Made by a program: the position numbers and the translations under genes. From the IMG/VR virus record IMGVR_UViG_3300048571_000088, positions 62,001 to 126,000 of that record: a stretch of DNA of 64,000 bases, one strand, 5' to 3'. Every line of letters begins with the position of its first letter. Positions within the stretch are counted from its first letter, which is position 1. The notes beneath the pieces were generated by a model. It was not told the origin of the DNA and did no database searches. It saw only the letters and a list, made by a program, of their open reading frames with translations. Shown one piece after another: positions 595-33,018 of this stretch.

Positions 595-669
595 GCACCA
601 GTTGCAAGAATCGAACTTGCTATCTCTTCACAATTTTCTTGTGAGTGCTCTACCTTGAGCTACCTGATG
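595..669 (-). tRNA. tRNA-like / degenerate tRNA with an aberrant anticodon arm
   Basis: Minus strand shows a canonical D-arm (TAGCTCAAGGTAGAGC) and T-arm (GCAAG-TTCGATT-CTTGC). The anticodon arm TCACAA-GAAAA-TTGTGA is non-canonical, the acceptor stem is imperfect and there is no CCA. Confidence 0.55.
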
Positions 670-12385: not shown

Positions 12386-12963
12386 TACACACCCTCCAGT
12401 TGAAATGTGGCTGAGTTGATACCGTACCTAATCACTGGCGGAGCGCCCGCGCAATAATTGCATAGCCAGTCAACAAAAACAATACAATACACACGACTTG
12501 TGTAAACACATCGAAAAAATCCATTACAACACCTTTCTGAAAAACGTCACAGCTATAATCATAAATCCAAGTAAGCTAGGTAGCACACCCAAACTGCTAC
12601 AAGGAGGACAAACCCTAAAACGCACAAGCAAAATGCCATCATCATTTCTACAAATCTCCTGAATACGAACGGGCAGAGAGTATAAAACCTCCGATAATAC
12701 AACCCAACAACAACAGAGGAAAACCCACAAGGAATACTTTCATCACACCATCACGAGCAGATTGAAAGTGAGAACACGCCACAGTTTTACACTGTCAAGC
12801 TCTATTTCAGGAATGAGCAGTAAAGACGCTGTACACGACAACAGCACCCCAACAGTGATTGCCAACCCATTGAAGCGAGTAGGTCTTTTGCCTTGTGAAA
12901 CTCTTCCTCGTTTTTAACATGAATAAACACGTTTTCTGTCATTTCAATTCTCTTTACTGTTGT

Positions 12964-13587
12964 TTAGTTTACTGTTTCACTGAGACTTCTCAATGCTTTG
13001 GAGTGTAAAATTGCATCTTCACGGTTAGTGTGTAGGTTCTTGTATGCGTCTTTATTTGACTCGCTTAAAGACACACATTTGCTATTTATATTATTATTTA
13101 GGTGTACGATTGGATAGTAATATAATTTACCTAATTGCAACTCACTAGATGTTAGTGGTTTTGGTACGTTGTACCTACCGATACAAATTGTTTCTCGTGG
13201 TGGGAACTCTCCAATGTAGTATTCAAATTGATCAGACCACACATTAATAAACGATATTGCAGTTAACCAAGATCTGTCGAGGTTAGGTCGTCGGTACCAT
13301 ATTGTTTGGGAGGGATCTAAAGCCCACTTTACTATTGAATCGTGATGTACATGTTTTTTGCTTGGTTCTTTGGTTTCTTGTTGGTTAGGGCGTTCGATGA
13401 ATGTATGTTTGCTGCTAATACTTAATTTTTCTTTCATATTGTATATAGACGGCAACCAAACAGAGTTATCGTCATCGAAAAACCTTATAGTTGGCTCGTT
13501 TTTATTTCCTGGCTTGTAGTAACTTTTCACTTGCGTACAATAGTGTGTAGCTCCTTCTGGTGCATTTTTCCAATCAATTTCACTCAT
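12964..13587 (-). CDS. modular phage protein (IDWKNAPEGATHY N-module plus VPKPL family C-module)
   Basis: Motifs shared with 2745..3173. Confidence 0.75.
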   Translation of the reverse strand: MSEIDWKNAPEGATHYCTQVKSYYKPGNKNEPTIRFFDDDNSVWLPSIYNMKEKLSISSKHTFIERPNQQETKEPSKKHVHHDSIVKWALDPSQTIWYRRPNLDRSWLTAISFINVWSDQFEYYIGEFPPRETICIGRYNVPKPLTSSELQLGKLYYYPIVHLNNNINSKCVSLSESNKDAYKNLHTNREDAILHSKALRSLSETVN

Positions 13588-13659
13588 TTTGACTCTCTTT
13601 GTTTTGTTATTAGTATTAAACTAGCCTTAAAAAGAACTGGCCGTCAGTGTTAAAAAAAT

Positions 13660-13687
13660 ATGAGTGGAGAATTAATTCTCCACTCAT
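13660..13687 (-). terminator. perfect 28-bp palindrome followed by a U-tract on the minus strand; terminator of the RNAP1 operon
   Basis: ATGAGTGGAGAATTAATTCTCCACTCAT next to AAAAAAAT. Confidence 0.75.
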
Positions 13688-13695
13688 GGGTTAGA

Positions 13696-14994
13696 TCAAG
13701 CTAGTAACTGATTAAAGCTGTCTGACAAACTTTTCAGTTTAGCAGTAGCTTCTTCTTTACTCGCCTGTTTGTTTGTTTCGGCAATACGGCTGATTTGATA
13801 GATTGGTTCTACCAGTTCACCAAAGAATGAATTCTCTTGGATGAAGTTTTCATGTTGCTTGTAGTTGACTAGTTTGTCACCTACTGGGAAAACTCCTTTA
13901 TTATGGACGCGAAGAAAATCACTACAAGCTTGAAGAATACCTGTTGTGTTTGCCCAATTAATAATTGAGAACATCATTGCAACTTGATCAGGACTTAATT
14001 CTAAATCTTTAGAAAGAATTCGACTGATCTCTTTTTGGTGTTGTGGTTTTGCCATGTTTCGTAAGTACAGTAATTCGAAACTGGAAGAACCTCCTGCGGT
14101 ATGTTTAACACTATCCATTACAAAGTCTTGAAGACCTCGAATATAGATAAATGTTAGTGTTTGATACATTTTATCGGTCAGGCGTAACATTGGAAACTCT
14201 AACTTATCTTGCTTAAAGTTTCCTTTACATTTGATTGCAGTTTTCTGGTACATTTCTGCACACATTGCAAAAACCCAACCATTATTTGTTGCTGGTCCGA
14301 TAGCTGCCTTAGCGTCGCGAGCGTTTAACAGACAATCCATGTAGGAGAGTTTGTATGAACGCTCCTTGAGGTTTAATTCTCTTGCATAAGGCATTTCATG
14401 TAATTGATATACCATTTCTTTGTCGAATAAAGAATCTGCTTCGTATTCGCCTTCTAGGAAGTTTTTATTCCAGTTTAATTCTTCTTGGCAAGGGATCATT
14501 TTAATGTAATCTGGACGATCATCTGCTTGTTTGAAGCAGTAAATGGGCGCTAAATCGCCATCACTATCCGCATGCGAAAAATAGACAATAGATTCTTTGT
14601 CTATTAATATGATATCTTTATTTTTCTCTGTGTCTAGGTAGTTATCAATCAGAATCTTGTGATTATTTGCTAAGTGGTTAGCAAAATCATCTCGACTCCA
14701 GACTCGTAACTCACGGAACATACTCATCCATAGACAAGGGTGTCGCATGAAGTTAAGCTTGAAACCACGAGTTAATTCTGTATACTCTGGTGATTCACAT
14801 TCAGAGAAACAGTATTTATATAACTTTTGATATAATTTACTATCAAAGATTACACATGTGTCTGGCGGAATCAACGCATCTGTTGATTGTTTCTTACTAA
14901 ATCCCATTACTTGTGGGGTTAGCAATGCGTATGTTCCGGTCAAAATCATTCTCCTTGGTTTTGAAAGATGAGTGGAGACATCATAAATCTCCAC
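13696..14994 (-). CDS. two-barrel RNA polymerase, beta'-like catalytic portion (RNAP1 C-half)
   Basis: FMRHPCLW (NRxP-like) and HADSDGD (DxDGD Mg triad, about 14554-14574); in frame with the upstream ORF. Confidence 0.8.
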   Translation of the reverse strand: MEIYDVSTHLSKPRRMILTGTYALLTPQVMGFSKKQSTDALIPPDTCVIFDSKLYQKLYKYCFSECESPEYTELTRGFKLNFMRHPCLWMSMFRELRVWSRDDFANHLANNHKILIDNYLDTEKNKDIILIDKESIVYFSHADSDGDLAPIYCFKQADDRPDYIKMIPCQEELNWNKNFLEGEYEADSLFDKEMVYQLHEMPYARELNLKERSYKLSYMDCLLNARDAKAAIGPATNNGWVFAMCAEMYQKTAIKCKGNFKQDKLEFPMLRLTDKMYQTLTFIYIRGLQDFVMDSVKHTAGGSSSFELLYLRNMAKPQHQKEISRILSKDLELSPDQVAMMFSIINWANTTGILQACSDFLRVHNKGVFPVGDKLVNYKQHENFIQENSFFGELVEPIYQISRIAETNKQASKEEATAKLKSLSDSFNQLLA

Positions 14995-15003
14995 TCTGTT
15001 GGA

Positions 15004-17184
15004 TTACAGTTCTGCACCTTGGTACAGTAACTTGTTAACTTCGTTCAAGTAAGCATTTAACTCTGTGTAACGCTTTTTACTTGGGTCTTGTTCAAACACA
15101 AATAAATAACGTGGAGTACCCATGCAATACTTTAAGATGTTAGAGATACGGATAATAACTTGATGGTAAGTCCAAGTTTTATCAGGGAGTTGGTTTACAA
15201 ACATGTTCAGTGTCTGAGCAGATGGTACTCGGATAACTGGTGCATTGTTGTAATTCATACCTTTAAACGATAACAAGAAGCCGTTTGGATTCCATTCAGG
15301 ATCGAGTAGTTTTGATGTACTCTTGAATGTACTGATTGCTGTTTCAATAAGGTCTTGTTGGGAGAAAACAGAACCTTTTGTTACTGATTTAGCAGAGTAC
15401 ATAGGAAGTTTATCCGTAGGGAACAAACTACCAGTGAGATCAGTTTTGATTTTCATCAATTCATCTACACACTTTTTGTCTGTTTCTGAGACGTACTTAT
15501 CCCAAATGTGCTTCTGTAGAGCTTTGTTACCGTTCTGCGCTAGAAAACGTCCTGTTTCAAACATGAAAGACATTGGTTTTGCTTTACCATAAGTCTGAGC
15601 TAACTCTGTGAAACGAGTATAGACTAGGCCGATGAAGACTTCCGTTTCGAGACCAAATTCGTCAACATAACGAAACTTTGGCAAAGATTTGAAAGCAGCG
15701 TTAACCATCTCCACATTGTTAGCATCAAGAATTCCCCATTTGTTTTTGGGTTTGTAAGTACCCATTTTGACAGCCAATGTAGCTCCAGCCAGTACAATTG
15801 TATTGACTTTAGCTTTGATTGCATTAGCACCTACAGCAAGATCAGGAGTAAGAGAAGGATATGAGCCTTCAAGGAACTCAATGAAACCTAGATTAGGTTT
15901 ACATTTTGTTACTCCCTTTAAACCTGTGTTAGAGTCTATACGTGCATTTCCTGCTGTTTTAGTGAGCAGAAGACGTAGCTTTCTTGCACCTAGGGTACCA
16001 GAATGAGTGAGAGACTCTAACTTGATTTCATTGATATTTTTGACCTCGATTGGTTTATCTTGGACATCAACACCAACAACAAATTTACCTGAAGGACAAT
16101 GGACAGACTCTCCAATCTTCAAGTTGATTTCATTGAACATGTCAGTAATACTAACAGACTGCATAATCTGTTGAGAGACATATTTAGGTGAAGCTTCAAT
16201 TTCACCAGCTAAGAATCGGCCATGACTGGACATACGACAGAATACAACAACAGATTCAGAAAGACAATCATCTCGAGAGACATAAGAATCTGTTGTTGGA
16301 TCGTATAGACAATCTTGAGCGATTACTGAAGTTGCTGGATTTCTTAAAGCAATTGCATCTGAGATTAAATGAGTTTTTAAGCGAGCTACAATGTTCTGAG
16401 CAGGAGGAAAGATTGAAAAGAAACTCTTTCCAGTCTCTTTATATCCTGGCGAACGATATAATGGATTTGATGGGTTATAAGGATGTACGACAAGTTTACC
16501 AGTCATAGAGAAAGAAGACTCTGATGAGGGATGGACTGGTAAGTCTTTAATGACCATTCGACAGGTTTCTGAAGAAGGTTTATAAGCATTTTGTCGTAGA
16601 ATTTCACCTAGTAACCGTAGAGGATGAGTATCTAAGAGTACAGGTTTGAGTTGAGTTGAGTTTAGTCGATCCCAAGGAGACAGGATGACGAAAGTATTTG
16701 ATACTTTCTTGAAGGCATTATAAGCTTTAGGAGTATTGTAATCCATGAAGGCTTGTAAAGCTCCAATGTCACCAGAGAGAAGATAACCGAAAGCTTTTTG
16801 ATCACTTTTGGCGTACTCTGAAAACATGTAAAGACGATGCTGTAATAGCATGTATAGAAGTTGATTCTGGTTAAGAATGCAATTTGAGTTTGTTGAAAAA
16901 TAATCAATCTTTTTGGATGATTTGAAAGATGAAATTTCAAAGAGGAATTTGGGAAATTGGGTTTTTGAAGCTTTTGGATTGTAAATTGAAGCTGAAATTT
17001 CGATTTCAGTGTTTTCTTGATCTGAATTGAAAAGACTCAAAACAAGAAATGTCTGCATTTTTAATTCCCATTTGAATAAAGATTCAAATCCTTTTGGGAT
17101 TAAAAGATCAATTTCAGAAGCATCAAGATTTTCTGGAATAAACGGAACTTCAGAAAAATCGATTGGGCGATTTGTGATTGCCAT
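15004..17184 (-). CDS. two-barrel RNA polymerase, beta-like portion (RNAP1 N-part)
   Basis: GNARIDSNTGLKGV (GDK..HGxKG-like), PDLAVGANAIK and VFIGLVYTRFTE (GxxYxxKL-like). Confidence 0.75.
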   Translation of the reverse strand: MAITNRPIDFSEVPFIPENLDASEIDLLIPKGFESLFKWELKMQTFLVLSLFNSDQENTEIEISASIYNPKASKTQFPKFLFEISSFKSSKKIDYFSTNSNCILNQNQLLYMLLQHRLYMFSEYAKSDQKAFGYLLSGDIGALQAFMDYNTPKAYNAFKKVSNTFVILSPWDRLNSTQLKPVLLDTHPLRLLGEILRQNAYKPSSETCRMVIKDLPVHPSSESSFSMTGKLVVHPYNPSNPLYRSPGYKETGKSFFSIFPPAQNIVARLKTHLISDAIALRNPATSVIAQDCLYDPTTDSYVSRDDCLSESVVVFCRMSSHGRFLAGEIEASPKYVSQQIMQSVSITDMFNEINLKIGESVHCPSGKFVVGVDVQDKPIEVKNINEIKLESLTHSGTLGARKLRLLLTKTAGNARIDSNTGLKGVTKCKPNLGFIEFLEGSYPSLTPDLAVGANAIKAKVNTIVLAGATLAVKMGTYKPKNKWGILDANNVEMVNAAFKSLPKFRYVDEFGLETEVFIGLVYTRFTELAQTYGKAKPMSFMFETGRFLAQNGNKALQKHIWDKYVSETDKKCVDELMKIKTDLTGSLFPTDKLPMYSAKSVTKGSVFSQQDLIETAISTFKSTSKLLDPEWNPNGFLLSFKGMNYNNAPVIRVPSAQTLNMFVNQLPDKTWTYHQVIIRISNILKYCMGTPRYLFVFEQDPSKKRYTELNAYLNEVNKLLYQGAEL

Positions 17185-17229
17185 TTTTACAACTCCTAGA
17201 GAATTTGGAAAGATTTGAAACTCCGATTT

Positions 17230-17373
17230 TTAAGATCGGAATTTGTTCCAGAGGAATTTTACACCTAAAAACAATCCGTAAATGGAAATTGCATCAAGAA
17301 TTCCGATTATAATTGCTGCAGCTATCGGAGAAAATCCTGTAACGCCAAGAATTGTATACCAAAATTCGATCAT
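17230..17373 (-). CDS. 47-aa single-TM microprotein
   Basis: MIEFWYTILGVTGFSPIAAAIIIGIL...; paralog of 17378..17518. Confidence 0.6.
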   Translation of the reverse strand: MIEFWYTILGVTGFSPIAAAIIIGILDAISIYGLFLGVKFLWNKFRS

Positions 17374-17377
17374 GCTT

Positions 17378-17518
17378 TTACACCTTAAGTGAGAGAAGAT
17401 AAAAGAATACGGCAACGGAAATTACTACAAGAATTCCGATCAGAATTGTTGCAGTCATCGGAGAAAATCCTGTTGCAGAAATTGCAACAGTAAGAATTGT
17501 ATTCCAAAATTCTATCAT
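17378..17518 (-). CDS. 46-aa TM microprotein (not in ORF track)
   Basis: Manual translation MIEFWNTILTVAISATGFSPMTATILIGILVVISVAVFFYLLSLKV. Confidence 0.6.
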   Translation of the reverse strand: MIEFWNTILTVAISATGFSPMTATILIGILVVISVAVFFYLLSLKV

Positions 17519-17688
17519 GCTGGTACACCTTGAGTGAGAATCAATGTTACTACTAATAAAGGCAAATAAGCAACAATTGAGAGAAAAGAATACAATACAA
17601 AATGTATTGTTCCGGCTGAAGAGAAAATATACAATCCGAGAATCAATAAACAGAATGCATAAATTGCTATTTGCTTGGTTGAGAACAT
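17515..17688 (-). CDS. 57-aa two-TM microprotein (not in ORF track)
   Basis: MFSTKQIAIYAFCLLILGLYIFSSAG...; ATGA overlap with the next ORF. Confidence 0.55.
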   Translation of the reverse strand: MFSTKQIAIYAFCLLILGLYIFSSAGTIHFVLYSFLSIVAYLPLLVVTLILTQGVPA

Positions 17689-17792
17689 TTTCGGAATCCT
17701 ATTTCTGCAAGAACAATTGACAAAAGGATTCCATAAAATCCTGTCCAGATTGAAATCAATGCTACGCCAATAATTGCAGCATACAATTTCAA
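17667..17792 (-). CDS. 41-aa TM microprotein (TTG start, not in ORF track)
   Basis: MKLYAAIIGVALISIWTGFYGILLSIVLAEIGFRKCSQPSK. Confidence 0.45.
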   Translation of the reverse strand: MKLYAAIIGVALISIWTGFYGILLSIVLAEIGFRKCSQPSK

Positions 17793-17793
17793 T

Positions 17794-18126
17794 CTAAAAG
17801 TTAAATCGAACATTTTTCAAGTCTCCTAGTTTCCATTCAGGTTCGAAAGTTTGCCATTTTCCTTTTACTTTCTTTCTGTATCCGAACAGTTTTGCTGTTA
17901 CGAAAAGACAAAGAGAAAACATTACACCGGAAAAAGCAGAAATTATGATGCCAGAAATTGTTCCTGTTAAAGCCATATAAGCTGTAATTCCGAAACCAAA
18001 AAAGGCATCGAGATATGCTTTATAGCCTAAAGCTGTTAGAAACAATTTCTTATCCATGCTGTACAGAATATAGAAAAACTCGACAGCAGTGATAATTCCA
18101 ACGAGTAATAATGTTGATAAAGACAT
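17794..18126 (-). CDS. multi-pass membrane protein (likely start MSLSTLL at 18126)
   Basis: About three hydrophobic segments, basic C-terminus, AAGGAG SD. Confidence 0.75.
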   Translation of the reverse strand: MSLSTLLLVGIITAVEFFYILYSMDKKLFLTALGYKAYLDAFFGFGITAYMALTGTISGIIISAFSGVMFSLCLFVTAKLFGYRKKVKGKWQTFEPEWKLGDLKNVRFNF

Positions 18127-18187
18127 TATAATCTCCTTTTGGGATTGAAGTGTGAACTTTTGATCATTCACACTTCAAGAAAGAATC

Positions 18188-19426
18188 TTAAATGATTTCT
18201 GCTGAATTGTAATTTTCTGATTCAACAGTTTCATCAAGAATTGTTTGTTCGTTGATTGATTCTTCATTCAAACTTGCAAGCATGGCTTCCAATGAATCTG
18301 GAATTGAATCAATTGCATTGGAATGCAAAGATAAACCGTTACTTGGATTTGCATTCTGAGTGTAAGAATTGATTCGAACGCCAACAAAAGAATGTCCATT
18401 TCGAGCACTGTTGTTTCCAACTGTTGCAACGAATGTTTGAACTTGACCTTGAACGAACATTTCTGTTGGTGTTTCTGTCACTTCTTCAAAGACCATTGAA
18501 CGAGTTCGAGCATCTTCTTTGCCAGTATTGAATGCTGTATCCATTACTGTTGCAATGATTGCTGTTTGATGTCCTTGGGAATCTTGAGCAGTTGCCATTG
18601 TTGAAGTTGCGTGCATTCCTTTTTCAGTGTTGGTTAAAGAATTGCGACCAATATTCAATCCTGTTTCATCTGGAGCAGAAGAAGTATTGGTAACAATGAA
18701 TCCATTTACACTGTTTACTGTTGGACAGTAAGTAAACTTGAATCGTTCTGCTAGACCTTTTAGATCACCCCAAGGATTTGTTGCACTTTGAGATGCTGGT
18801 GATAAAGCGTAAACAGGAACGATATTTTCAGTCAGGAAAACTTGTGAACGACGAAGTAAACCTTTTGCAATCACTTTCTTACGGATTTCTTGATATTGCT
18901 CAAATGCTTGTTTGGTTGCATCTTTAGCCAATTCTTCATCAGTGATTGTTGCTTCAATTTCACTGATCGCTTTCATCAAGATTTCGTAAGCTTGAGTTGT
19001 TACTGTGTTTGGTACATCTAGAGCTGGTAAATGTACATCACGGAATTGACAGTCTGAAGCTAATAAAGCATTGAATGAGTTTGCTTTACCATCAATCTTA
19101 AGAGACTGAAACATATCAAACACACCTTTTGCTGTGTTACGATATACTGATTCACCTTTATTCGTAATGCTTAATTCAGCTCGTCCGTTAACTGCTACCC
19201 AAATTGTACGAGTTGCATTGAGTCCACTAGAGTATGGTTCAATGATGTACATTGGAATGCAATGATAGGTTGTTACTTTACCTTTACTATTAAGTAATGG
19301 GATATTTTCTACGATTCGTGAGGAATGACGAAAAGCCAATACTGTTGCTAGTAGTTGGCAAGGAGTCGACCGTTGATTGGTTTGGACTTTTGCTTGTGTT
19401 GCTTGAGAGAGGTCTAGAGAAGACAT
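18188..19426 (-). CDS. 412-aa beta-rich protein with an acidic tail; possible OB-fold ssDNA-binding protein
   Basis: C-terminal FVQGQVQT...VGVRI resembles SSB strands, followed by an acidic tail; function is inference. Confidence 0.7.
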   Translation of the reverse strand: MSSLDLSQATQAKVQTNQRSTPCQLLATVLAFRHSSRIVENIPLLNSKGKVTTYHCIPMYIIEPYSSGLNATRTIWVAVNGRAELSITNKGESVYRNTAKGVFDMFQSLKIDGKANSFNALLASDCQFRDVHLPALDVPNTVTTQAYEILMKAISEIEATITDEELAKDATKQAFEQYQEIRKKVIAKGLLRRSQVFLTENIVPVYALSPASQSATNPWGDLKGLAERFKFTYCPTVNSVNGFIVTNTSSAPDETGLNIGRNSLTNTEKGMHATSTMATAQDSQGHQTAIIATVMDTAFNTGKEDARTRSMVFEEVTETPTEMFVQGQVQTFVATVGNNSARNGHSFVGVRINSYTQNANPSNGLSLHSNAIDSIPDSLEAMLASLNEESINEQTILDETVESENYNSAEII

Positions 19427-19462
19427 GGTTTAGATCCTGTAGTGGATGGATGGGTTTTGTAA

Positions 19463-19641
19463 CAGTGCTATCAAGGAGTAGAGAGCACTGGTATAAGATT
19501 TTGTTTGTGTTTAATCTTATACCAGTGATATCTTTTACTGTGTATATTAATATGAAAAGACAGCTTTTGGTTTGTTTTAAAACAATAAGTATTGAGAGTG
19601 TAAAAGAGGTGTTTATCGAGTTGAAGCGAGATAAACACCTC
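19463..19641 (-). promoter_or_regulatory. structured leader of the RNAP1 operon (overlapping hairpins)
   Basis: 15-bp stem 19486-19527, 12-bp stem 19606-19641 and a competing 7-bp stem 19463-19490. Confidence 0.55.
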
Positions 19642-19792
19642 ATAAGTTCATTGGATGGTTTGTTGTGTTGCTTATATATTATATATTGCTATATCTGTTG
19701 TTAGTATTTATAGCTTTAGCTTCTGTATTCTAAGATTTGGGTACAGTAAGGAAGAAAAGTTAAGGTCTGTGGTTAGCAGATTAAGTAGCCAT

Positions 19793-20377
19793 TTATACCT
19801 GATTTGACTGTTTTAGTTTTATCTCTAAAGTCATGTACATCTTATTCGAGCAAAAACTATTTGGTGCCCTGTGGAAATCTGACACACTATAGAGAAAACT
19901 ATCATGATTTTTTAATTCATTGTCTTCACAACTTACTAATAAACTAATACTGTTAGTATTATATTTTGAAAAGTCACATCCTGCATATGTAGCACCCATT
20001 ATTATAATACTGTCTTCGTATGTGTAACTATCATGTAATATTTCACTCGTTAAGAGTTTAATGTATTCATTTTCTTTAATGACTTTTTGAATGTTTTCTG
20101 ATTTATGTTGTTCATAATTAGCCGCAGGGTCATCAAGATAAATATTTTTAATTCTTAAATTATTTCTAAGATTGTTTAAACTTAGTGCTAGATCTATACT
20201 TAGTTGTTCCGAGCTTGGTAATATAATTACACTATTAGGTTTTAAATGGAAAAGACCTTCTTTATTTGTTTTATTAATAACTTGTATAATTACTGATAAA
20301 ATATTCTCTGCGTATTCGATTGAAGTTGTTTTTTCTATTTCTGATTCAAATTTATTAAGTAACATATTATTAAACAT
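19793..20377 (-). CDS. hypothetical protein
   Basis: 194-aa ORF coupled to the upstream gene. Confidence 0.65.
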   Translation of the reverse strand: MFNNMLLNKFESEIEKTTSIEYAENILSVIIQVINKTNKEGLFHLKPNSVIILPSSEQLSIDLALSLNNLRNNLRIKNIYLDDPAANYEQHKSENIQKVIKENEYIKLLTSEILHDSYTYEDSIIIMGATYAGCDFSKYNTNSISLLVSCEDNELKNHDSFLYSVSDFHRAPNSFCSNKMYMTLEIKLKQSNQV

Positions 20378-20783
20378 TAGTTTCTTCTTTAGTTAAAGTT
20401 ATGGTTAATACAAAAGTTGTTGTTAATAACTCAAAAAAGTTATTACGAATTTTTGAAGGAATTTCTTCTGAATCTAGTATCAGTGTGATAGCGTCTTCTT
20501 CACCTAATTCATCTTTTAAATAATCTAAATTTAATGTATCTAATTTATTTATATCTATTACAGTGAGTCTTGATTTATTTATGCTTAATTTTTCGGAGTA
20601 ACGTTGTTTTTCAGAACCTTCTAAATATTGTTCTGGATTATTCGTAAGTATGAATGTACTTACATTTTTCATTTTAAGCATTTGAATATATTTTCGTATA
20701 TAAGTAATAAAATCTTTTTCTGCTGGTTTAATGTTTAAGTTACTTTTAATAAATTGTATATTTTTGTATGTATATCGATACAT
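20370..20783 (-). CDS. hypothetical protein
   Basis: 137-aa ORF with AAGGA SD. Confidence 0.65.
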   Translation of the reverse strand: MYRYTYKNIQFIKSNLNIKPAEKDFITYIRKYIQMLKMKNVSTFILTNNPEQYLEGSEKQRYSEKLSINKSRLTVIDINKLDTLNLDYLKDELGEEDAITLILDSEEIPSKIRNNFFELLTTTFVLTITLTKEETNV

Positions 20784-20803
20784 GTTATTTATCCTTTATG
20801 TTA

Positions 20804-22121
20804 TTATTTAGATATTTCGTATTTATCTTCTAGCCAATTTTTTAAAAAGGTTCTCATTCTTTTGGAAGGTATATACAGATTAATCTCTTCATTGTTTCTT
20901 ATTGCTGATCTCCAAATAAACTGTACCATCTCAGATATAGCATATACATCTTCTTTAACACTAAAGCCCCTAGCTGATGAGGCTTTAACTAATTCAGGAT
21001 TAGGGTAAAGATTAAGAAGGTAAGCTACTGTATGTCGATCTCCATAGTTATTAGTAGCTTTAGTATTCATTGGTAACCATTCATTTGAATAATTGTTGAC
21101 ACCGTTCTTCTGTACTCTTGTTTTACAATCTTTAAAACAAGTCCAGAGTAAATCTGATTTTTTACATTTGGCTTTATTTCTAATGTAATTGTCTAAGTTA
21201 GCAGAAAGTGTGTCTTTGACTGCTGTTTGTTTGCAGTTAGTAGAAGATAAAGCAGATTCTTTACTGCCTGTTTCATTTAATTTCCCTCTTAAAGTGTCTT
21301 CGTAGACATTAATTAGATGTTTTATTTCTGAAGGTTTTTTACCAAATCTGATAACTTCATAATCTAAGCCATGAGCTTTTAAGTAAGTAGCCATGATATT
21401 ATCTTCGAACATGTATGTGGCAATCCATACTTCTTTAAAAGCTTTTAAAGCATTAATTGCAAGTTCCCATATCACTACTTTTCCGTCTATCAGCATTAAC
21501 TGCCCTAAGTCACACAAAGTAGCAAATGTTTCGTAATAAGTATCTTTAGTAGTATCTCTTCCGTTAGAAGTGTCTCCATAATTTTCTCTGTGAAATTTAA
21601 GAGTAATCCCGTCTGTTTCTTCTAGTGTGATCCAACCATTATCAAACATAGCTTTTATTTCTTTCTCATTGTAGACATCATAGATCTCATACACACTTAA
21701 CATCTCATCAATTACTAAGATATAATCTCTAGCCTGCTTAAGTATTTCTGGTGTTAAGTTAACAAAGAGTTGATGAGTACTTACTATGTTATCATTATTC
21801 TTTAATAACTGAGGAAGAGATTCAGCCTTACCTCCTTTATTCGAGAAATAAGGATGTTTGAACACTCTATCTTTAAGAGGAGTTTCTTCTGCTTCGTTAT
21901 ATTGGTACAGTAAAGAAGAATCATCACTCTCTACAATGATCGGCCTTTTATATAAGTCTTCAGGATCATACACTGTTCCTGCAATTCTGTGACACTCTGT
22001 GAGTAGTGGTGTTATAAATATGTACTTTTGAGACATGTCAGAGTTTTTAATATTTTCAATAACCTTAGTTGTTTTGCCTGACCCGCATCATTGCATCGTA
22101 CACTTTAATGTTTGTTTTCAT
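20804..22121 (-). pseudogene. SF2 helicase-like / origin-binding protein, +1 frameshift at 22085 inside Walker A
   Basis: ATG 22121 with SD gives MKTNIKVYDAMM-(extra C)-GSGKTT, then LVIDE (Walker B) and EMVQFIWRSAIR; paralog of 23251..24576. Confidence 0.8.
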
Positions 22122-22183
22122 AGTTGTAATTCCTTAGTTAGTGGGTTGATGCACACAAGAGAGGTACACACCATTACCTCTCT

Positions 22184-22212
22184 ATTATAACAAGTTAGAG
22201 TTAACTTGTCAA
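22184..22212 (-). promoter_or_regulatory. perfect consensus sigma70 promoter
   Basis: Minus strand TTGACA-17 nt-TATAAT. Confidence 0.85.
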
Positions 22213-23164
22213 CTCCCTCTCTAGCTAAATCGTATTGAGAGAAAAACCTCTCTAGCTAAATCAAAAAAACCCTATTTTTTAGCGCTCTAATTGAGATTAA
22301 CCTTAAGAAGAATAAGTTTAAAAATATAAAAGAGTAGTTCTAGTTTACTCGTACTCCCTTTCGGTCGTAGTCGTAAACTCCAAGATTCTTTCTTAGCTTC
22401 CTATCGTTTCCAGTCATATATCTGTGTACTTCGTACCCATCTATATTTCTTACCACTTATAGTTATTATTGTAGTAGTACTTAATCTTTAAAAGAAAGTA
22501 AGTAAAGAGAAGAAGGTACTAATACTTAATAATGTCTAGGAAAGATCTATGTAGTTTCTTATTTCTTATAGCTAGTATTTGTACATCCATCTTTTTTACT
22601 TATCTTTTCATAGGTATGTACTTTTCTTTGCTAAGTAAGTATTTTTATTAAATGTTTATTTCTTAAAAGGTACTAAGAAACTATAGGAAGGAAAGAGAAA
22701 ATTAAAGAATTTCTTGTTACCAGATTATTCTTACTCCTTCCAGTCGTACTCATAATCTTACAGATATTTATCAAATAGGTACCTAATCTGAAGAGAATAC
22801 TAGGAAACAAGAGGAGACCGAACCGGAGGTTTGGGGTACGAGTGTTTAGCTAGCTGGAAGCTAGACAATAAGATACCTTTCAAAGAGAACTTTAGTTTAC
22901 GAATGCGATGCGTCAGCGGAGCAAGAGTAAACAGAGAACTACTCTTTTAATGTAGGGCTTTAAAAAATAATTCTTTTAAAATTAAATACTTGGAAGCCAT
23001 TTTACTCAATTTCTAGGAGATTAGACCCCCCCCCCTTAGGGCTTTCCAGGGAAAGGTTCGTAAAATCAAATACTTGGAAGCCATTTTAGAGAATTTATAG
23101 GAACATATAAACATTGATGTTTATATGTATGCAGTTCTCTGTTTTATTCCTATGAATAAACTTA
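22213..23164. other. candidate replication origin (AT-rich non-coding region with direct repeats)
   Basis: About 1 kb without ORFs; 16-bp repeat at 22216/22247, 21-bp repeat at 22984/23068, C10 run at 23026-23035; flanked by divergent helicase-like genes. Confidence 0.55.
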
Positions 23165-23193
23165 TTGCATTTTCCTAGGACATATGTTATATT
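23165..23193 (+). promoter_or_regulatory. sigma70-like promoter
   Basis: TTGCAT-17 nt-TATATT upstream of 23251. Confidence 0.65.
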
Positions 23194-23250
23194 AAATAGT
23201 AAGCTACTAAAAATGTCTTTGGTAGCATATTAAGGAGAGCCACACAACAG

Positions 23251-24576
23251 ATGACTAAAATTACAGTAATAGATGCAATAATGGGAGCAGGAAAGAGTTC
23301 TTATATTACCCATCTTATTCATAAAGCACCACATGATCAATCTTTTCTTTACATCACTCCGTTACTAAGTGAATGTCACAGGGTAGCTTGTACTACTTCA
23401 ACAAGATCTAAAGGAGAACCACCAAAGAGAGATTCTAATAATAATATTATCTATACAGAAACTACTAATCCTAATGCAGTAGATATAAGATATAGAAAGT
23501 TTAAACACCCTGAAGTGAAGAGTAGTGGAGGTAAGATTGATAGTTTAAAATATCTAGTTGAGCATAAGCATAATATTACTTCTACCCACTCATTACTCCT
23601 AAGACTAGAAGCGCAAAAAACAGAGTTATTTAATCTTAAAGATTATATATTGATAGTAGATGAAGCTTTAAATGCTTACTCTGAATATGATCAACTCAGT
23701 GCTTATACTGTTAAGCAACAGATTAAGAATGGATTATTTAGTATAGATCCAGATGGGTTTACACTTTTATTTCATCCAGAAGTTATAGGTACAACAGGGA
23801 GTATAGAAGGTTTAACTCAGTTAGAAGAGTATGCTGAACTTTGTAACAGGAGAGTATTACTTTTTGTGGGAGGTAAGATTATAGTTTGGGAGTTAAGTCC
23901 TGATTTATTAAACTCATTTAAAGAGGTGTGGTTTTGCACGTACCAATATAAAGGTACAGTATTGGATACTTATTTAATATCCAATGGATTTCAAGTACAG
24001 ATTACAACAATACCTACTAATAAGAAACCTTCTGACTATAAGCCTCTTATTACTATTATTGAAGAAGATAAACTGAATGCTATAGGCGCAGAAAAATACT
24101 CTTTAAGCTACACTGCTATGGAAGAGGTAGAAACTTTAGAAGTACTCAGAAAGAATTTGATGAATTTTTTTATCACTAAATGCTGTAACGCTACAGCGAA
24201 AGATCGTATCTGGACTTCCTATAAAGAGAAAAGAGATGTTAATAATAGAATTATTATTGTTAATAAAGTTATAGCAGGCAAAAATTACTTTAAACAATGG
24301 TTACCATTTAATACTAAAGCAACTAATGAATATTCTAATTGTCACAACGTAGCTTACCTTTGTAATATATTTCTTAATGTAGATATTAAGACTGTTGCTA
24401 GTAAGAAAGGTCATCCAGTTGATGAAGACATGCATGCGTTAAACGAGATGATCCAGTTTATCTGGAGATCTGCAATTAGAAACCAAGAACCAATTAATTT
24501 ATATATACCTTCTGCAAGAATGAGAAATCTCTTCAAGAGTTGGTTAAATGATGAGTACGAAATTAAGGAACTCTAA
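23251..24576 (+). CDS. SF2 helicase-like / origin-binding protein
   Basis: DAIMGAGKS Walker A, LIVDE Walker B, EMIQFIWRSAIR motif VI-like. Confidence 0.85.
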   Translation: MTKITVIDAIMGAGKSSYITHLIHKAPHDQSFLYITPLLSECHRVACTTSTRSKGEPPKRDSNNNIIYTETTNPNAVDIRYRKFKHPEVKSSGGKIDSLKYLVEHKHNITSTHSLLLRLEAQKTELFNLKDYILIVDEALNAYSEYDQLSAYTVKQQIKNGLFSIDPDGFTLLFHPEVIGTTGSIEGLTQLEEYAELCNRRVLLFVGGKIIVWELSPDLLNSFKEVWFCTYQYKGTVLDTYLISNGFQVQITTIPTNKKPSDYKPLITIIEEDKLNAIGAEKYSLSYTAMEEVETLEVLRKNLMNFFITKCCNATAKDRIWTSYKEKRDVNNRIIIVNKVIAGKNYFKQWLPFNTKATNEYSNCHNVAYLCNIFLNVDIKTVASKKGHPVDEDMHALNEMIQFIWRSAIRNQEPINLYIPSARMRNLFKSWLNDEYEIKEL

Positions 24577-29601: not shown

Positions 29602-30294
29602 TTACTCCATGTTTGCTACGGTAAGCATAACGATTGTGTGACAGAAATGATCACTTCCTTTACAGTAGCAACCTAATACCTTTCCTTTCATACTCTTGAT
29701 CTCAGCCTTAAAAGCAGGATCAAATAGAGCATGAATGAAATCAAAGCGATGTTGAGCTACAGCTTCATCAACTGTATCAACTTTAACAGTTCTTGGAATA
29801 CCAGACAGATGAGTATAAGGATTACCATACTTAGATCCCCTTCCTCGGCCGCAGTATATATCACATTTCTCTTTCTTTCCTACGTTTGCCATCAAGTGAT
29901 AATACTTGTCCTGATTAGCTTGCATAAGACGAAGAGAGTCTTTAATCCAAATACGATAAACTTCTGTAGCTTGGCAAGCACTTCCTGTCTTGCCAAAGAT
30001 ATCAGAGAATCCTCGATACTTACGAATTGTCTTCAATAAGTCAGGATTCTCTTGGAAGTATAAATCCCACAGAGAAGAATACAGCTCTCGTACCTCTTCC
30101 TGATTTATAGCTTGTTTCCCTTTGGCTTGAGAAACACTTAGTCCTGTTGTACCATCAGAGAATACCTTTGCAGCTTGGTATATCTCTTCGATTGATTTTC
30201 CATTGTAAGCTTTAAGTCTTGCAAAAAACGCCGAGAAAAGCTTATTCCCTTTCGAACTGCATTCTAACATTGGCTTGAAACCATGTTGTAACAT
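29602..30294 (-). CDS. NADAR-like domain fused to a DUF4326 domain (start MLQHG at 30294)
   Basis: SIEEIYQAAKVF (NADAR EHYYQAxK-like); C-terminal YCGRG.GS.YGNP...KGKVLGCYC...CH. Confidence 0.7.
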   Translation of the reverse strand: MLQHGFKPMLECSSKGNKLFSAFFARLKAYNGKSIEEIYQAAKVFSDGTTGLSVSQAKGKQAINQEEVRELYSSLWDLYFQENPDLLKTIRKYRGFSDIFGKTGSACQATEVYRIWIKDSLRLMQANQDKYYHLMANVGKKEKCDIYCGRGRGSKYGNPYTHLSGIPRTVKVDTVDEAVAQHRFDFIHALFDPAFKAEIKSMKGKVLGCYCKGSDHFCHTIVMLTVANME

Positions 30295-30374
30295 GACACA
30301 TCTCCTAACGATGATTAACAACTCATATACATGATGGAACTCAATTAAGAATTCCATCAAGTCTATAAGCTTAC

Positions 30375-31942: not shown

Positions 31943-32413
31943 TCAGAATGGAAGATCATCGTCTTCGTCTGAGTAGACGCTAGGCGTAGGAGTAGGAGAC
32001 AACTTAGGGATAGGTGCAAATCCATCAGTTGTACTTGCACCTGTACGTTTCTTACGGGCTGCACCACCTGTATACATATCTTTGTTCGCATATTCTGGGT
32101 TACGCTGATCCAGAATATCAAAGCTTTTTACAGCGATGTGTGGCGATGCTTTCCAGTTTCCACTCTGATCTTGATAGTTACCAGTACGAGGAGTACCAGT
32201 AATGGTAATCAGGTTTCCAACATAGATACGATTGTGCATCATGTTGTACGCTTCTTCACTGCGAGGCCACAACTGGCATACCCAAGAATCAACAATTTCT
32301 TGATCTTGATACAATTCCTTGAACATCACTACAAACTTGAAGGGTTTACCTTCAACGTAACCTTGCGTCAGTACTTGAGCGATACGACCTGTGTTCTGAA
32401 TGATAGGTAACAT
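31943..32413 (-). CDS. ssb: single-stranded DNA-binding protein
   Basis: OB-fold G.LITITG..RT..YQDQ.G; acidic DDDLPF tail. Confidence 0.9.
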   Translation of the reverse strand: MLPIIQNTGRIAQVLTQGYVEGKPFKFVVMFKELYQDQEIVDSWVCQLWPRSEEAYNMMHNRIYVGNLITITGTPRTGNYQDQSGNWKASPHIAVKSFDILDQRNPEYANKDMYTGGAARKKRTGASTTDGFAPIPKLSPTPTPSVYSDEDDDLPF

Positions 32414-32418
32414 GTTTG

Positions 32419-33018
32419 TTACTCCTTGAAAATCTGTGGGTTATTACGGATGAAGTCACGAAACTCTTCCATCATCTCTGGACGACGAGAGTTAAACACT
32501 GGAATACTAAACTCAGATGCTAAGTTAATAGCTGTAGCAGTACCACCCGTCTTAATAGAGGTGTCTGCACTTGTCTGCGCACCATCTCGTGTATAACAGA
32601 TTACAAAGTCTACAGGAGTTTCTAAGTCCTGTCCTAGAATCTGAAATATATTACGAGTGTGGGCTTTCTTTGAGAAGCCGTACAGACGTTCAGGATGAGG
32701 ATGAACCATCTTAACGTACTCTTCAGCTTCCTTTTGTTTCTCTACTCCGTCGGTAACCAGATACGTACCATTCAGTAATCCAACACGTTTCATGTTGAAT
32801 CCCTCTTCTGGAAGATATATTTCCAGTTGAGTAGGTAATGCAACACCACCTTGAATTGCATGATGAGCACCAGATTGGCAGTAGAAATCACAGCCAGTAG
32901 CATTACCAGAGCGAAGCGTACCACCTTGAGTTACCAGTTTTTCACTGATAGACATCAAATGATGAAGATGCAACTCTGATACACCTTCACGGTTTCCAAT
33001 ACCTGCGAAACTGAACAT
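32419..33018 (-). CDS. SLOG-superfamily (DprA/Smf-like) protein
   Basis: FAGIGNR, LRSGNATGCD, RNIFQILG, VDFVICYT, GGTATAI. Confidence 0.85.
   Translation of the reverse strand: MFSFAGIGNREGVSELHLHHLMSISEKLVTQGGTLRSGNATGCDFYCQSGAHHAIQGGVALPTQLEIYLPEEGFNMKRVGLLNGTYLVTDGVEKQKEAEEYVKMVHPHPERLYGFSKKAHTRNIFQILGQDLETPVDFVICYTRDGAQTSADTSIKTGGTATAINLASEFSIPVFNSRRPEMMEEFRDFIRNNPQIFKE

What the first reader, a model, noticed from the sequence alone, without database searches (positions are those of the whole stretch)
17230..19426. RNAP1 is co-operonic with five membrane (micro)proteins and an OB-fold-like protein
The operon runs 412-aa acidic-tailed protein, then a multi-TM protein, then four overlapping 41-57 aa TM peptides (three missed by the ORF track; two are MIEFW.TIL...GFSP paralogs), then RNAP1, ending at a 28-bp palindrome terminator. 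An RNA polymerase packaged with a set of membrane microproteins is unusual. It could indicate membrane-tethered or compartmentalised phage transcription. The 412-aa protein could be an SSB-type transcription cofactor, by analogy with SSB use by N4 polymerases.
Basis: partly seen in the sequence, partly recalled or inferred. Interest (0 to 1): 0.7.

Follow-up and report, generated by a model that had tools for sequence, protein, structure and literature searches.

The report
Phage SSB, membrane-microprotein and RNA-polymerase gene cluster
A freshwater jumbo phage carries a conserved run of genes for a two-domain single-stranded-DNA-binding protein, five tiny membrane proteins and a split, non-canonical RNA polymerase; comparison with relatives suggests the membrane proteins belong with the DNA-binding protein rather than with the polymerase.

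Summary
On the minus strand lie a 412-aa protein, a 110-aa multi-TM protein (not 125 aa; start ATG 18126) and four hydrophobic micro-ORFs of 48, 57, 46 and 47 aa. After them come a 726-aa and a 432-aa gene and a 28-bp palindromic terminator.

Structure prediction shows the 412-aa protein is a tandem two-OB-fold SSB with an acidic tail. The 726-aa protein has the beta/Rpb2 fold. The 432-aa protein carries an invariant DxDGD motif and is fused to the 726-aa part in relatives, so "RNAP1" is a split two-barrel RNA polymerase.

The micro-ORFs are real genes. They fall into HMM-defined families conserved in related metagenomic jumbo phages. Each has a Shine-Dalgarno site, and they fill the region (0 of 1000 shuffles match).

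The order SSB, membrane proteins, RNAP recurs in 12 of 13 relatives that carry the membrane family. Three other facts point away from the polymerase:
- The SSB and the 110-aa protein are adjacent in 13 of 13.
- In one phage the SSB-membrane module lies 31 kb from the RNAP gene.
- Phage ME3 has the RNAP without the 110-aa protein.

A complex prediction of the RNAP with the 110-aa protein gave no answer. Membrane-tethered transcription is therefore unproven. A membrane complex that works with the SSB is the better-supported reading. Function remains untested.

The parts
19606..19641 (-). 12-bp stem-loop followed by TTTTAC, lying between the upstream 194-aa gene and the SSB gene. It is a candidate terminator of the upstream unit.
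19486..19527 (-). 15-bp perfect stem-loop (21-nt arms at 90%) in the 367-nt leader, 60-100 nt upstream of the SSB start codon. Its role is unknown.
18188..19426 (-). 412-aa tandem two-OB-fold SSB-like protein. OB1 spans about residues 26-134, a helical hairpin 141-187 and OB2 191-357. Residues 358-412 form a disordered acidic tail that ends in a hydrophobic tip (EII).
   Evidence: a small family of 26 representatives; pieces appear in two metatranscriptome runs
18145..18178 (-). 12-bp stem-loop between the SSB stop codon and the start of the 110-aa gene, without a U-tract. A stem-loop occupies this position in 5 of 8 related loci folded (L003, L004, L005, L011, L013).
17794..18126 (-). T4 family: a 110-aa integral membrane protein with 2-4 hydrophobic segments, a GTISG...G glycine motif and a conserved basic/aromatic C-terminal tail. 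It is the most conserved gene of the cluster (61-73% identity to its closest relatives).
17667..17813 (-). Family A micro-protein, 48 aa, hydrophobic core. It overlaps the 110-aa gene by 20 nt.
17515..17688 (-). Family B micro-protein, 57 aa, with two hydrophobic segments. It overlaps A by 22 nt.
   Evidence: RNA-library contig 17614-17764 spans the A/B overlap
17378..17518 (-). Family C micro-protein, copy 1, 46 aa (MIEFW...TGFSP followed by a TM segment). Its start overlaps the end of B (ATGA).
17230..17373 (-). Family C micro-protein, copy 2, 47 aa, with a basic C-terminal tip (KFLWNKFRS). A tandem duplicate of this family also occurs in relative L012.
17222..17240 (-). Short (8-10 bp) stem-loop overlapping the stop codon of C2, upstream of the RNAP gene. 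A stem-loop is present at this position in all 8 related loci folded.
15004..17184 (-). 726-aa RNA polymerase beta/Rpb2-like subunit, with the invariant motif GNARIDSNTGLKGVTK.
14970..14996 (-). 9-bp stem-loop (GAGTGGAGA..TCTCCACTC) between the beta-like stop codon and the likely beta'-like start. It shares its core with the terminator at 13660-13687.
13696..14994 (-). Beta'-like subunit: 432 aa as a mechanical ORF. The likely start is TTG 14943 or ATG 14949, after an AAGGAG site. It carries the invariant catalytic motif D143-x-D145-G-D147 and is fused to the beta-like part in homologs of 1140-1250 aa.
13660..13687 (-). 28-bp perfect palindrome followed by ATTTTTTT, an intrinsic-terminator-like site that ends the run.

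Best explanation
Shown:
- The stretch is a conserved gene neighbourhood of a lineage of mostly freshwater jumbo phages, distantly related to Acinetobacter phage ME3.
- It has three blocks separated by stem-loops.
- Block 1 is a tandem two-OB-fold SSB with an acidic tail that ends in a hydrophobic tip.
- Block 2 is a tightly packed, overlapping cassette of five small integral membrane proteins: T4 (110 aa), A, B, C1 and C2.
- Block 3 is a split two-barrel RNA polymerase: a 726-aa beta-like subunit and a beta'-like subunit of about 415-432 aa with a DxDGD motif.

Inferred:
- The five membrane proteins insert into the host inner membrane and assemble into one hetero-oligomeric complex.
- Their functional partner is the SSB rather than the polymerase.
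- The most likely job is to hold or organise SSB-coated phage DNA (replication or recombination intermediates) at the membrane. This would resemble the way phage phi29's early membrane proteins p1 and p16.7 organise membrane-associated replication.
- The RNAP genes lie next door because they belong to the same early/middle, DNA-metabolism expression block.
For: Protein identities:
- SSB fold. Acidic tail with a hydrophobic tip in 26 of 27 family members.
- RNAP fold and motifs.

The membrane genes are real:
- Families T4, A, B and C are recovered by HMM in 5-13 related loci, and in the window's own genome occur only in this cluster.
- T4 is 61-73% identical to relatives whose RNAP is 48-55% and whose SSB is 37-41% identical.
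- Every start has an SD site, and ORF packing beats 1000 of 1000 shuffles.

Linkage to the SSB:
- The SSB and T4 are immediate neighbours in 13 of 13 genomes that have T4. This includes L016, where their order is swapped.
- In G001 the module SSB-T4-D-A-C lies 31 kb from the RNAP gene.
- ME3 has the RNAP and the SSB but no T4.

Context and expression:
- The neighbours are DNA-metabolism genes: a DprA-like protein, a classical SSB, NTP pyrophosphohydrolase and alkylation repair.
- Two metatranscriptome libraries hold pieces of the SSB gene. One holds a contig across the A/B overlap.
Against: - No experiment or interaction prediction links the SSB to the membrane proteins. That pair was not folded.
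- All three families are confined to one phage lineage. The neighbourhood evidence therefore rests on few independent events: one order swap, one translocation and one loss.
- The SSB-membrane module is also within 4 kb of the RNAP gene in 12 of 13 genomes, so a link to the polymerase is not excluded.
- The genome has a second, classical SSB-like gene (window 31943-32413). The 412-aa protein may therefore have a specialised role, possibly in transcription.
- TM prediction used hydropathy windows only.
- The phi29 analogy is from memory and rests on no sequence similarity.
Confidence: 0.35

Rival explanations
1. The membrane cassette acts on its own and is only a syntenic neighbour of the SSB and RNAP genes. 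It would be an early or middle membrane function such as superinfection exclusion, host-membrane takeover or control of lysis timing (holin- or antiholin-like small proteins).
For: - Small proteins with 1-4 TM segments and basic C-termini are typical of phage exclusion and holin proteins (general knowledge).
- The content between T4 and the RNAP gene is highly variable: 2-7 small genes, families appear and disappear, and there are tandem duplications. Such turnover is typical of accessory or conflict genes.
- Stem-loops flank the cassette on both sides.
- ME3 does without T4.
Against: - T4 is the most conserved gene of the region, which is unusual for an arms-race accessory gene.
- SSB-T4 adjacency survives an order swap and a translocation.
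- No endolysin or lysis-category hit was found among the neighbours searched.
- No PADLOC, Pfam or NCBIfam hit was found.
Confidence: 0.3
2. The membrane microproteins tether or compartmentalise the phage RNA polymerase at the membrane, and the two-OB SSB is its cofactor, as SSBs are for the phage N4 polymerases.
For: - The order SSB, membrane genes, RNAP holds in 12 of 13 T4-bearing relatives, including those with a fused RNAP at only 33-37% identity.
- The genes are on the same strand and tightly spaced, and the only terminator with a U-tract comes after the beta' gene.
- A second, classical SSB exists in the genome, which would leave the 412-aa protein free for another role.
Against: - The complex prediction of the beta-like subunit with T4 gave ipSAE 0.01. 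The tool states this is neither support nor evidence against.
- ME3 keeps the RNAP without T4.
- G001 separates the RNAP gene from the module by 31 kb.
- The cytoplasmic parts of A, B, C1 and C2 are only a few residues long.
- The RNA-library contigs cover the SSB gene and the A/B junction but not the RNAP genes.
Confidence: 0.12
3. The micro-ORFs are chance open frames in an AT-rich spacer and are not translated.
For: They are short, gene callers missed them in several contigs, and there are no proteomic data.
Against: - 0 of 1000 shuffles reach the observed same-strand ORF coverage.
- Every start has an SD site.
- Families A, B and C are recovered by HMM in 5-11 diverged loci in the same order, with TM character preserved.
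Confidence: 0.02

Closest known systems
Two-OB-fold SSBs of Deinococcus and Thermus (PDB 1se8, 3udg, 2ihe, 2fxq) and SPbeta prophage YorF
   Same: Two OB folds in one chain, followed by a flexible acidic C-terminal tail. Foldseek E-values are 5e-7 to 1e-6 against PDB, 2e-8 against D. radiodurans SSB and 1e-6 against YorF in AFDB/Swiss-Prot.
   Different: - There is no detectable sequence similarity: no Pfam PF00436 hit and no PDB sequence hit, and identity in the structural alignments is only 6-9%.
- A 45-residue helical hairpin is inserted between the OB folds.
- The protein is larger (412 aa against 260-300 aa).
- ssDNA binding has not been tested.
Non-canonical two-barrel phage RNA polymerases: the phiKZ and AR9 split multisubunit RNAPs, YonO of SPbeta and the P23-45 RNAPs (PMC7598289, PMC5467207, bioRxiv 10.1101/2022.12.01.518664)
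   Same: A beta/Rpb2-like fold, and a DxDGD catalytic loop on a separate or fused beta'-like part. No other RNAP subunit gene was recognised next to the pair.
   Different: - It has no sequence-level match to any Pfam, PHROG, NCBIfam or PDB entry.
- It has only two pieces (726 aa and about 430 aa) or a single chain of about 1150 aa, which is much smaller than the phiKZ or AR9 sets.
- The ME3 orthologs are annotated as hypothetical.
- A 2021 survey did not list double-barrel RNAPs for ME3's group of jumbo phages (PMC7824862).
- Activity and promoters are unknown.
Phage phi29 early membrane proteins p1 and p16.7, which organise membrane-associated DNA replication (recalled from the literature, not tested here)
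   Same: Small early membrane proteins encoded alongside the phage SSB and replication genes. The proposed role is to anchor replicating DNA at the membrane.
   Different: No sequence or fold comparison was made. p16.7 has its own DNA-binding domain, and none is visible in T4, A, B or C. The host and the phage type are different.
Phage N4 transcription, in which SSB acts as a polymerase cofactor
   Same: A phage-encoded RNAP lies near an SSB-type gene.
   Different: The N4 polymerases are T7-like single-subunit enzymes, not two-barrel enzymes. No hairpin-promoter motif was found here. Cofactor activity has not been tested.
Holins, and the small coat proteins of filamentous phages (a resemblance in shape only)
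   Same: Length is 46-110 aa, with 1-4 TM segments and a basic C-terminal tip. Family C has an amphipathic N-terminus, a TM segment and a K/R tail, like inovirus major coat proteins.
   Different: There are no Pfam or PHROG matches to holin, spanin or coat families above noise. No endolysin is adjacent, and this is a tailed jumbo phage.

Membership tests
Bacterial/phage OB-fold SSB | OB-fold domain(s) of the SSB type | tested here: met
   AF2 model with pLDDT 80. Foldseek top hits are the two-OB SSBs 1se8, 3udg and 2ihe (E 5e-7 to 1e-6, probability 1.0). Many single-OB SSBs align to residues 238-412.
Bacterial/phage OB-fold SSB | Match to the SSB sequence profile (Pfam PF00436 / TIGR00621) | tested here: not met
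   The 412-aa protein has no Pfam, NCBIfam or PHROG hit. The profile does detect a different gene in the window, at 31943-32413.
Bacterial/phage OB-fold SSB | Disordered acidic C-terminal tail ending in hydrophobic residues | tested here: met
   Residues 358-412 have pLDDT below 50, with 11 D+E and 0 K+R, and end in EII. 26 of 27 family members have acidic tails; 25 end in a hydrophobic residue.
Bacterial/phage OB-fold SSB | Binds single-stranded DNA | not testable with these tools
   Needs an EMSA or fluorescence titration with purified protein.
Two-barrel (multisubunit-type) RNA polymerase | Beta/Rpb2-like subunit fold with a conserved basic-residue loop | tested here: met
   AF2 model with pLDDT 88. 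415 PDB hits have E below 1e-3, and all 50 listed are chain B (second-largest subunit) of cellular and viral RNAPs. G412-N-A-R-I-D-S-N-T-G-L-K-G-V-T-K is invariant or nearly so in 32 sequences.
Two-barrel (multisubunit-type) RNA polymerase | DxDGD metal-binding triad on the beta'-like part | tested here: met
   D143, D145, G146 and D147 are invariant in 19 sequences. The 432-aa protein aligns with the C-terminal half of the fused homolog P0020 (34% identity, E 9e-74). The fold of the 432-aa protein itself was not modelled.
Two-barrel (multisubunit-type) RNA polymerase | DNA-dependent RNA synthesis | not testable with these tools
   Needs an in vitro transcription assay.
Single operon (one transcript from the SSB gene to the beta' gene) | Same strand, short or overlapping gaps, and an SD site at each start | tested here: met
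Single operon (one transcript from the SSB gene to the beta' gene) | No internal terminator, one promoter, and transcripts that span the junctions | tested here: inconclusive
   - Stem-loops without U-tracts lie at the SSB/T4, C2/beta and beta/beta' junctions, and relatives have them at the first two.
- No promoter was identified.
- RNA-library contigs cover only the SSB gene and the A/B junction.
Holin / lysis cassette | Match to holin or spanin families and adjacency to an endolysin gene | tested here: not met
   The only lysis-category hit is noise: E 0.14 to an Rz-like spanin for one ortholog. No lysis gene was found among the neighbours scanned.
Integral membrane proteins | At least one hydrophobic segment of about 19 or more residues | tested here: met
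   Kyte-Doolittle 19-residue windows of 1.6 or more occur in all five products and in their orthologs. No dedicated TM or topology predictor was available.

The most novel reading that the evidence does not exclude
In this lineage of jumbo phages that lack a phage nucleus, the five small membrane proteins build an inner-membrane platform. The platform recruits the two-OB SSB through its acidic tail and, with it, the split two-barrel RNA polymerase. The result would be a membrane-attached replication-transcription factory encoded as one conserved supermodule.
Probability: 0.12. Interest if true: 0.8.

Novelty: new variant of a known kind. Interest (0 to 1): 0.55.

Why it matters
- It defines a conserved module of unknown function that current gene callers and annotations largely miss. 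The module comprises four families of 46-130-aa membrane proteins, always next to an unusual two-OB SSB, in an under-studied lineage of environmental jumbo phages.
- It shows that this lineage, including the cultured Acinetobacter phage ME3, encodes an unannotated minimal two-barrel RNA polymerase that occurs both split and fused.
- If the membrane proteins organise SSB-coated DNA or the polymerase at the membrane, this would be a way to compartmentalise a large phage genome without a protein nucleus.
- ME3 is cultured and lacks the 110-aa protein, which makes a natural comparison experimentally accessible.

Tried and rejected
1. Pfam, PHROG, NCBIfam, PADLOC and PDB sequence searches of the 412-aa, 726-aa and 432-aa proteins and the micro-proteins found nothing significant. 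The 110-aa protein gave only weak hits to PHROGs of unknown function.
2. DNA and protein searches of the phage collection found only ME3 and PBAB25. Single-sequence scans of viral contigs found nothing.
3. A search for a phage-specific promoter motif found none. I tried k-mers of the SSB leader across the genome, k-mers shared between intergenic regions of each relative, and 8-mer enrichment in 119 upstream regions. The recurrent AGAAGCTAAAG turned out to be coding (EAKE).
4. The sigma-70 scan found no good site upstream of the SSB, T4 or RNAP genes. The only perfect site nearby is at 22212-22184.
5. Complex prediction of the beta-like subunit with the 110-aa protein gave ipSAE 0.01, which counts neither for nor against binding. 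The SSB+T4 and RNAP+SSB-tail pairs could not be run because the cap is one job.
6. Population variants from eight metagenome runs were too few for a dN/dS test: one synonymous change in C2 and a handful in A and B.
7. Rfam found no RNA family in 12500-23500.
8. I first treated the stem-loops as evidence for separate transcription units. I dropped this because the same kind of stem-loop also sits between the beta and beta' genes, which must be co-expressed, and the genome has 69 such perfect hairpins.
Full report
**Context**

The window is bases 62001-126000 of a single 242,588-bp viral contig. DNA runs that hold it are freshwater metagenomes. Nearly all genes from about 50 kb down to 0.7 kb of the window lie on the minus strand. 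The only relatives in the phage collection are Acinetobacter jumbo phage vB_AbaM_ME3 (Metrivirus, 234.9 kb) and a fragment of PBAB25, at 33-35% protein identity.

**Observation**

The described ORFs are all present:
- 412 aa at 19426..18188
- a '125-aa' ORF at 18171..17794
- micro-ORFs of 48 aa (17813..17667), 57 aa (17688..17515), 46 aa (17518..17378) and 47 aa (17373..17230)
- 726 aa at 17184..15004
- 432 aa at 14994..13696
- a 28-bp perfect palindrome with a T-run at 13687-13660

Reading the sequence gives three corrections:
- The multi-TM gene starts at ATG 18126, which gives 110 aa. This start has an AAGGAG site and matches the MSL.TLLLVG N-terminus shared by all orthologs.
- The terminator follows the 432-aa gene, not the 726-aa gene.
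- The beta'-like gene probably starts at TTG 14943 or ATG 14949, after an AAGGAG site.

Several results support the micro-ORFs as coding:
- All five small products contain hydrophobic segments (Kyte-Doolittle).
- Every start has a Shine-Dalgarno-like site, and three junctions overlap.
- Same-strand ORFs of at least 45 aa cover 100% of 17230-18126. Dinucleotide shuffles give a mean of 32% and a maximum of 87% (0 of 1000).
- The two MIEFW peptides are 59% identical.

**What the large proteins are**

None has a sequence-level match in Pfam, PHROGs, NCBIfam or the PDB.

The 412-aa protein:
- It belongs to a small family of 26 representatives among 1.84 billion proteins.
- An AF2 model built on that family has pLDDT 80. 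It shows two OB folds (about 26-134 and 191-357), a helical hairpin (141-187) and a disordered tail (358-412).
- Foldseek places it with the two-OB SSBs of Deinococcus and Thermus in the PDB (E 5e-7 to 1e-6).
- In AFDB/Swiss-Prot it matches D. radiodurans SSB and SPbeta YorF. In BFVD it matches ME3 gp139 (E 1e-28).
- Its tail has 11 acidic and no basic residues. An acidic tail recurs in 26 of 27 family members, and 25 of 27 end in a hydrophobic residue such as EII, SMI, TPF or DMI. This is the hallmark of SSB interaction tails (general knowledge).

The 726-aa protein:
- It has 51 metagenomic homolog clusters.
- Its AF2 model has pLDDT 88. It matches chain B (Rpb2/beta) of Pol I, II and III and of archaeal, ASFV and vaccinia polymerases, with 415 hits at E below 1e-3.
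- It carries an invariant GNARIDSNTGLKGVTK loop.

The 432-aa protein:
- Homologs of 1140-1250 aa are fusions of the 726-aa and 432-aa proteins. P0020 aligns to the 432-aa protein at 34% identity (E 9e-74).
- The 432-aa part has an invariant D-x-D-G-D motif in 19 sequences.

'RNAP1' is therefore a minimal two-barrel RNA polymerase that is split in this phage. The ME3 orthologs, gp152 and gp154, are annotated as hypothetical. A 2021 survey of jumbo phages did not list double-barrel RNAPs for ME3's group (PMC7824862).

**Conservation of the cluster**

I fetched the contigs that encode RNAP homologs and, later, those that encode homologs of the 110-aa protein. I then built HMMs of each family.

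The families:
- **T4**: the multi-TM protein of 110-130 aa.
- **A**: 48-69 aa.
- **B**: 57-78 aa, two hydrophobic segments.
- **C**: 46-94 aa, with a pattern of FW..L.G...TG.S, a TM segment and a basic tip. It is tandemly duplicated in the window and in L012.
- **D**: 62-67 aa, not membrane, absent from the window.

Gene order in relatives:
- The window's order SSB-T4-A-B-C-RNAP recurs in L002, L003, L004 and L011 (RNAP 48-55% identical).
- L012, L005 and L013 have SSB-T4-D-(A/TM)-C-RNAP.
- L007, L009 and L015 (RNAP 33-37% identical, split or fused) have the SSB, T4 and four to six further small genes before the RNAP gene. Most of these small genes are hydrophobic.
- Several micro-ORFs had not been called by the source annotations.
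- In the window's own genome each family occurs only here.
- T4 is the best-conserved gene of the region. It is 61-73% identical where the RNAP is 48-55% and the SSB 37-41% identical.

**Which neighbour do the membrane genes belong to?**

Three natural rearrangements bear on this:
- In L016 the order is TM-T4-SSB. Four non-membrane genes follow before the fused RNAP gene.
- In the 183.7-kb viral contig G001 the module SSB-T4-D-A-C lies at about 110.5-113.5 kb, and the fused RNAP gene lies at about 143.5 kb, 31 kb away.
- ME3 has the SSB ortholog 4.8 kb upstream of the RNAP gene but no T4 homolog anywhere in its genome.

SSB-T4 adjacency therefore holds in 13 of 13 genomes with T4. T4 lies within 4 kb of the RNAP gene in 12 of 13, and the RNAP can exist without T4. 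All three families are confined to one phage lineage, so these counts reflect few independent events and are suggestive only.

**Transcription-unit structure**

- No sigma-70-like site of quality lies upstream of the SSB, T4 or RNAP genes. The nearest perfect one is at 22212-22184.
- No phage-specific promoter motif emerged.
- A 367-nt leader upstream of the SSB gene contains a 12-bp hairpin with a T-run (19641-19606) and a 15-bp hairpin (19527-19486).
- Stable stem-loops without U-tracts lie between the SSB and T4 genes (18178-18145) and after the last micro-ORF. Relatives show them at the equivalent positions: in 5 of 8 loci after the SSB gene and in all 8 before the RNAP gene.
- A similar stem-loop lies between the beta and beta' genes (14996-14970). 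It shares its core, GAGTGGAGA/TCTCCACTC, with the terminator.
- The genome holds 69 perfect hairpins of at least 10 bp.
- For these last two reasons the hairpins do not prove separate units. They may be processing or stability elements.

In two metatranscriptome libraries, the contigs that lie on this 5.9-kb stretch cover only parts of the SSB gene (both libraries) and 17614-17764 across the A/B overlap (one library). None covers the RNAP genes. This fits an abundant SSB message and transcription of the cassette. It is weak evidence because the data are assembled contigs and DNA carry-over is possible.

A complex prediction of the beta-like subunit with T4, using both family alignments, scored ipSAE 0.00-0.01. 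The tool's verdict is 'no answer', which is neither support nor evidence against binding. The cytoplasmic parts of A, B, C1 and C2 are only a few residues long. T4 has a conserved tail of about 30 residues (GYRK..W..EP.W.L) that could be an interaction site.

**Interpretation**

- My best reading (confidence about 0.35) is that the five membrane proteins form one inner-membrane complex that works with the two-OB SSB. It might hold SSB-coated replication or recombination intermediates at the membrane, as recalled for phi29 p1 and p16.7. The RNAP genes would be neighbours because they share the same temporal and functional block. DprA-like, classical SSB, NTP pyrophosphohydrolase and repair genes flank the region.
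- Nearly as likely (0.3) is an autonomous membrane function such as exclusion, takeover or lysis timing.
- Non-coding micro-ORFs are essentially excluded.

**Novelty**

The components belong to known kinds: an OB-fold SSB, a two-barrel RNAP and small phage membrane proteins. The families themselves are unannotated. I found no description of the conserved SSB-membrane-RNAP arrangement in the searched literature.

Noticed in passing
window 46179-49613 (-): A 1144-aa ORF lies in a patch of much higher G+C (48-51%, against 35-40% around it). It contains a DDGDGD motif. A protein-language-model search places it nearest to clusters carrying PF05183 (RdRP; the YonO/QDE-1 kind of two-barrel polymerase). 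It is probably a second, unrelated two-barrel RNA polymerase in the same phage. It shows no BLAST similarity to the 726-aa and 432-aa pair.
   Followed up: partly
L002 8743-9112; L003 10620-11012; L011 9752-10122 (relatives): In three relatives a group I intron (Rfam RF00028, 72-92 bits) interrupts the beta'-like gene. In L002 the insertion is exactly inside the catalytic DxDGD motif (…SHADGD|…|GDLAP…). ME3 has an endonuclease gene (gp153) between its RNAP genes. The window's copy has no intron.
   Followed up: yes
window 14970-14996 and 13660-13687: The same stem core (GAGTGGAGA / TCTCCACTC) forms the hairpin between the beta-like and beta'-like genes and also the terminator after the beta' gene. 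It occurs nowhere else in the genome. The split of an ancestrally fused RNAP gene may have involved duplication or insertion of this hairpin.
   Followed up: partly
window 22184-22275 (-): One of only two perfect sigma-70 consensus promoters in the 242-kb genome (TTGACA, 17 nt, TGtTATAAT) lies here. It is preceded by two direct repeats of GATTTAGCTAGAGAGG and followed by a 9-bp hairpin. It sits upstream of the 410-aa P-loop gene and looks like a regulated early promoter.
   Followed up: partly
window 20804-22036 (-) and 23251-24576 (+): Two divergently oriented paralogs of 410 and 441 aa have a Walker-A motif (GAGKS). Both match phrog_2467 (unknown function, E 4e-80 and 2.5e-68).
   Followed up: no
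window 31943-32413 (-) and 32419-33018 (-): A second, classical single-OB SSB-like gene (PF00436 22.5 bits, TIGR00621 29.9 bits, phrog_44) lies directly next to a DprA-like recombination-mediator gene (phrog_768, E 2e-42). The phage therefore encodes two SSB-type proteins.
   Followed up: partly
window 595-668 (-): ARAGORN reports a tRNA-Phe with the unusual anticodon AAA.
   Followed up: no
window 60902-62170 (+): A 422-aa ORF has an intein splicing domain (PF14890, E 9e-16) at residues 128-265.
   Followed up: no
window 54015-55232 (+) and 55254-58745 (+): A 405-aa protein has an N-terminal Mtd_N (major tropism determinant) domain. The 1163-aa protein next to it has a phage-tail repeat and an SO2946-like C-terminal domain. 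This is probably the tail-fibre or receptor-binding region.
   Followed up: no
window 29602-30360 (-): A 252-aa protein combines a DarT1-associated NADAR domain with DUF4326. Equivalent genes lie a few kb upstream of the SSB gene in relatives L003, L004 and L013, which shows that synteny extends beyond the cluster.
   Followed up: no
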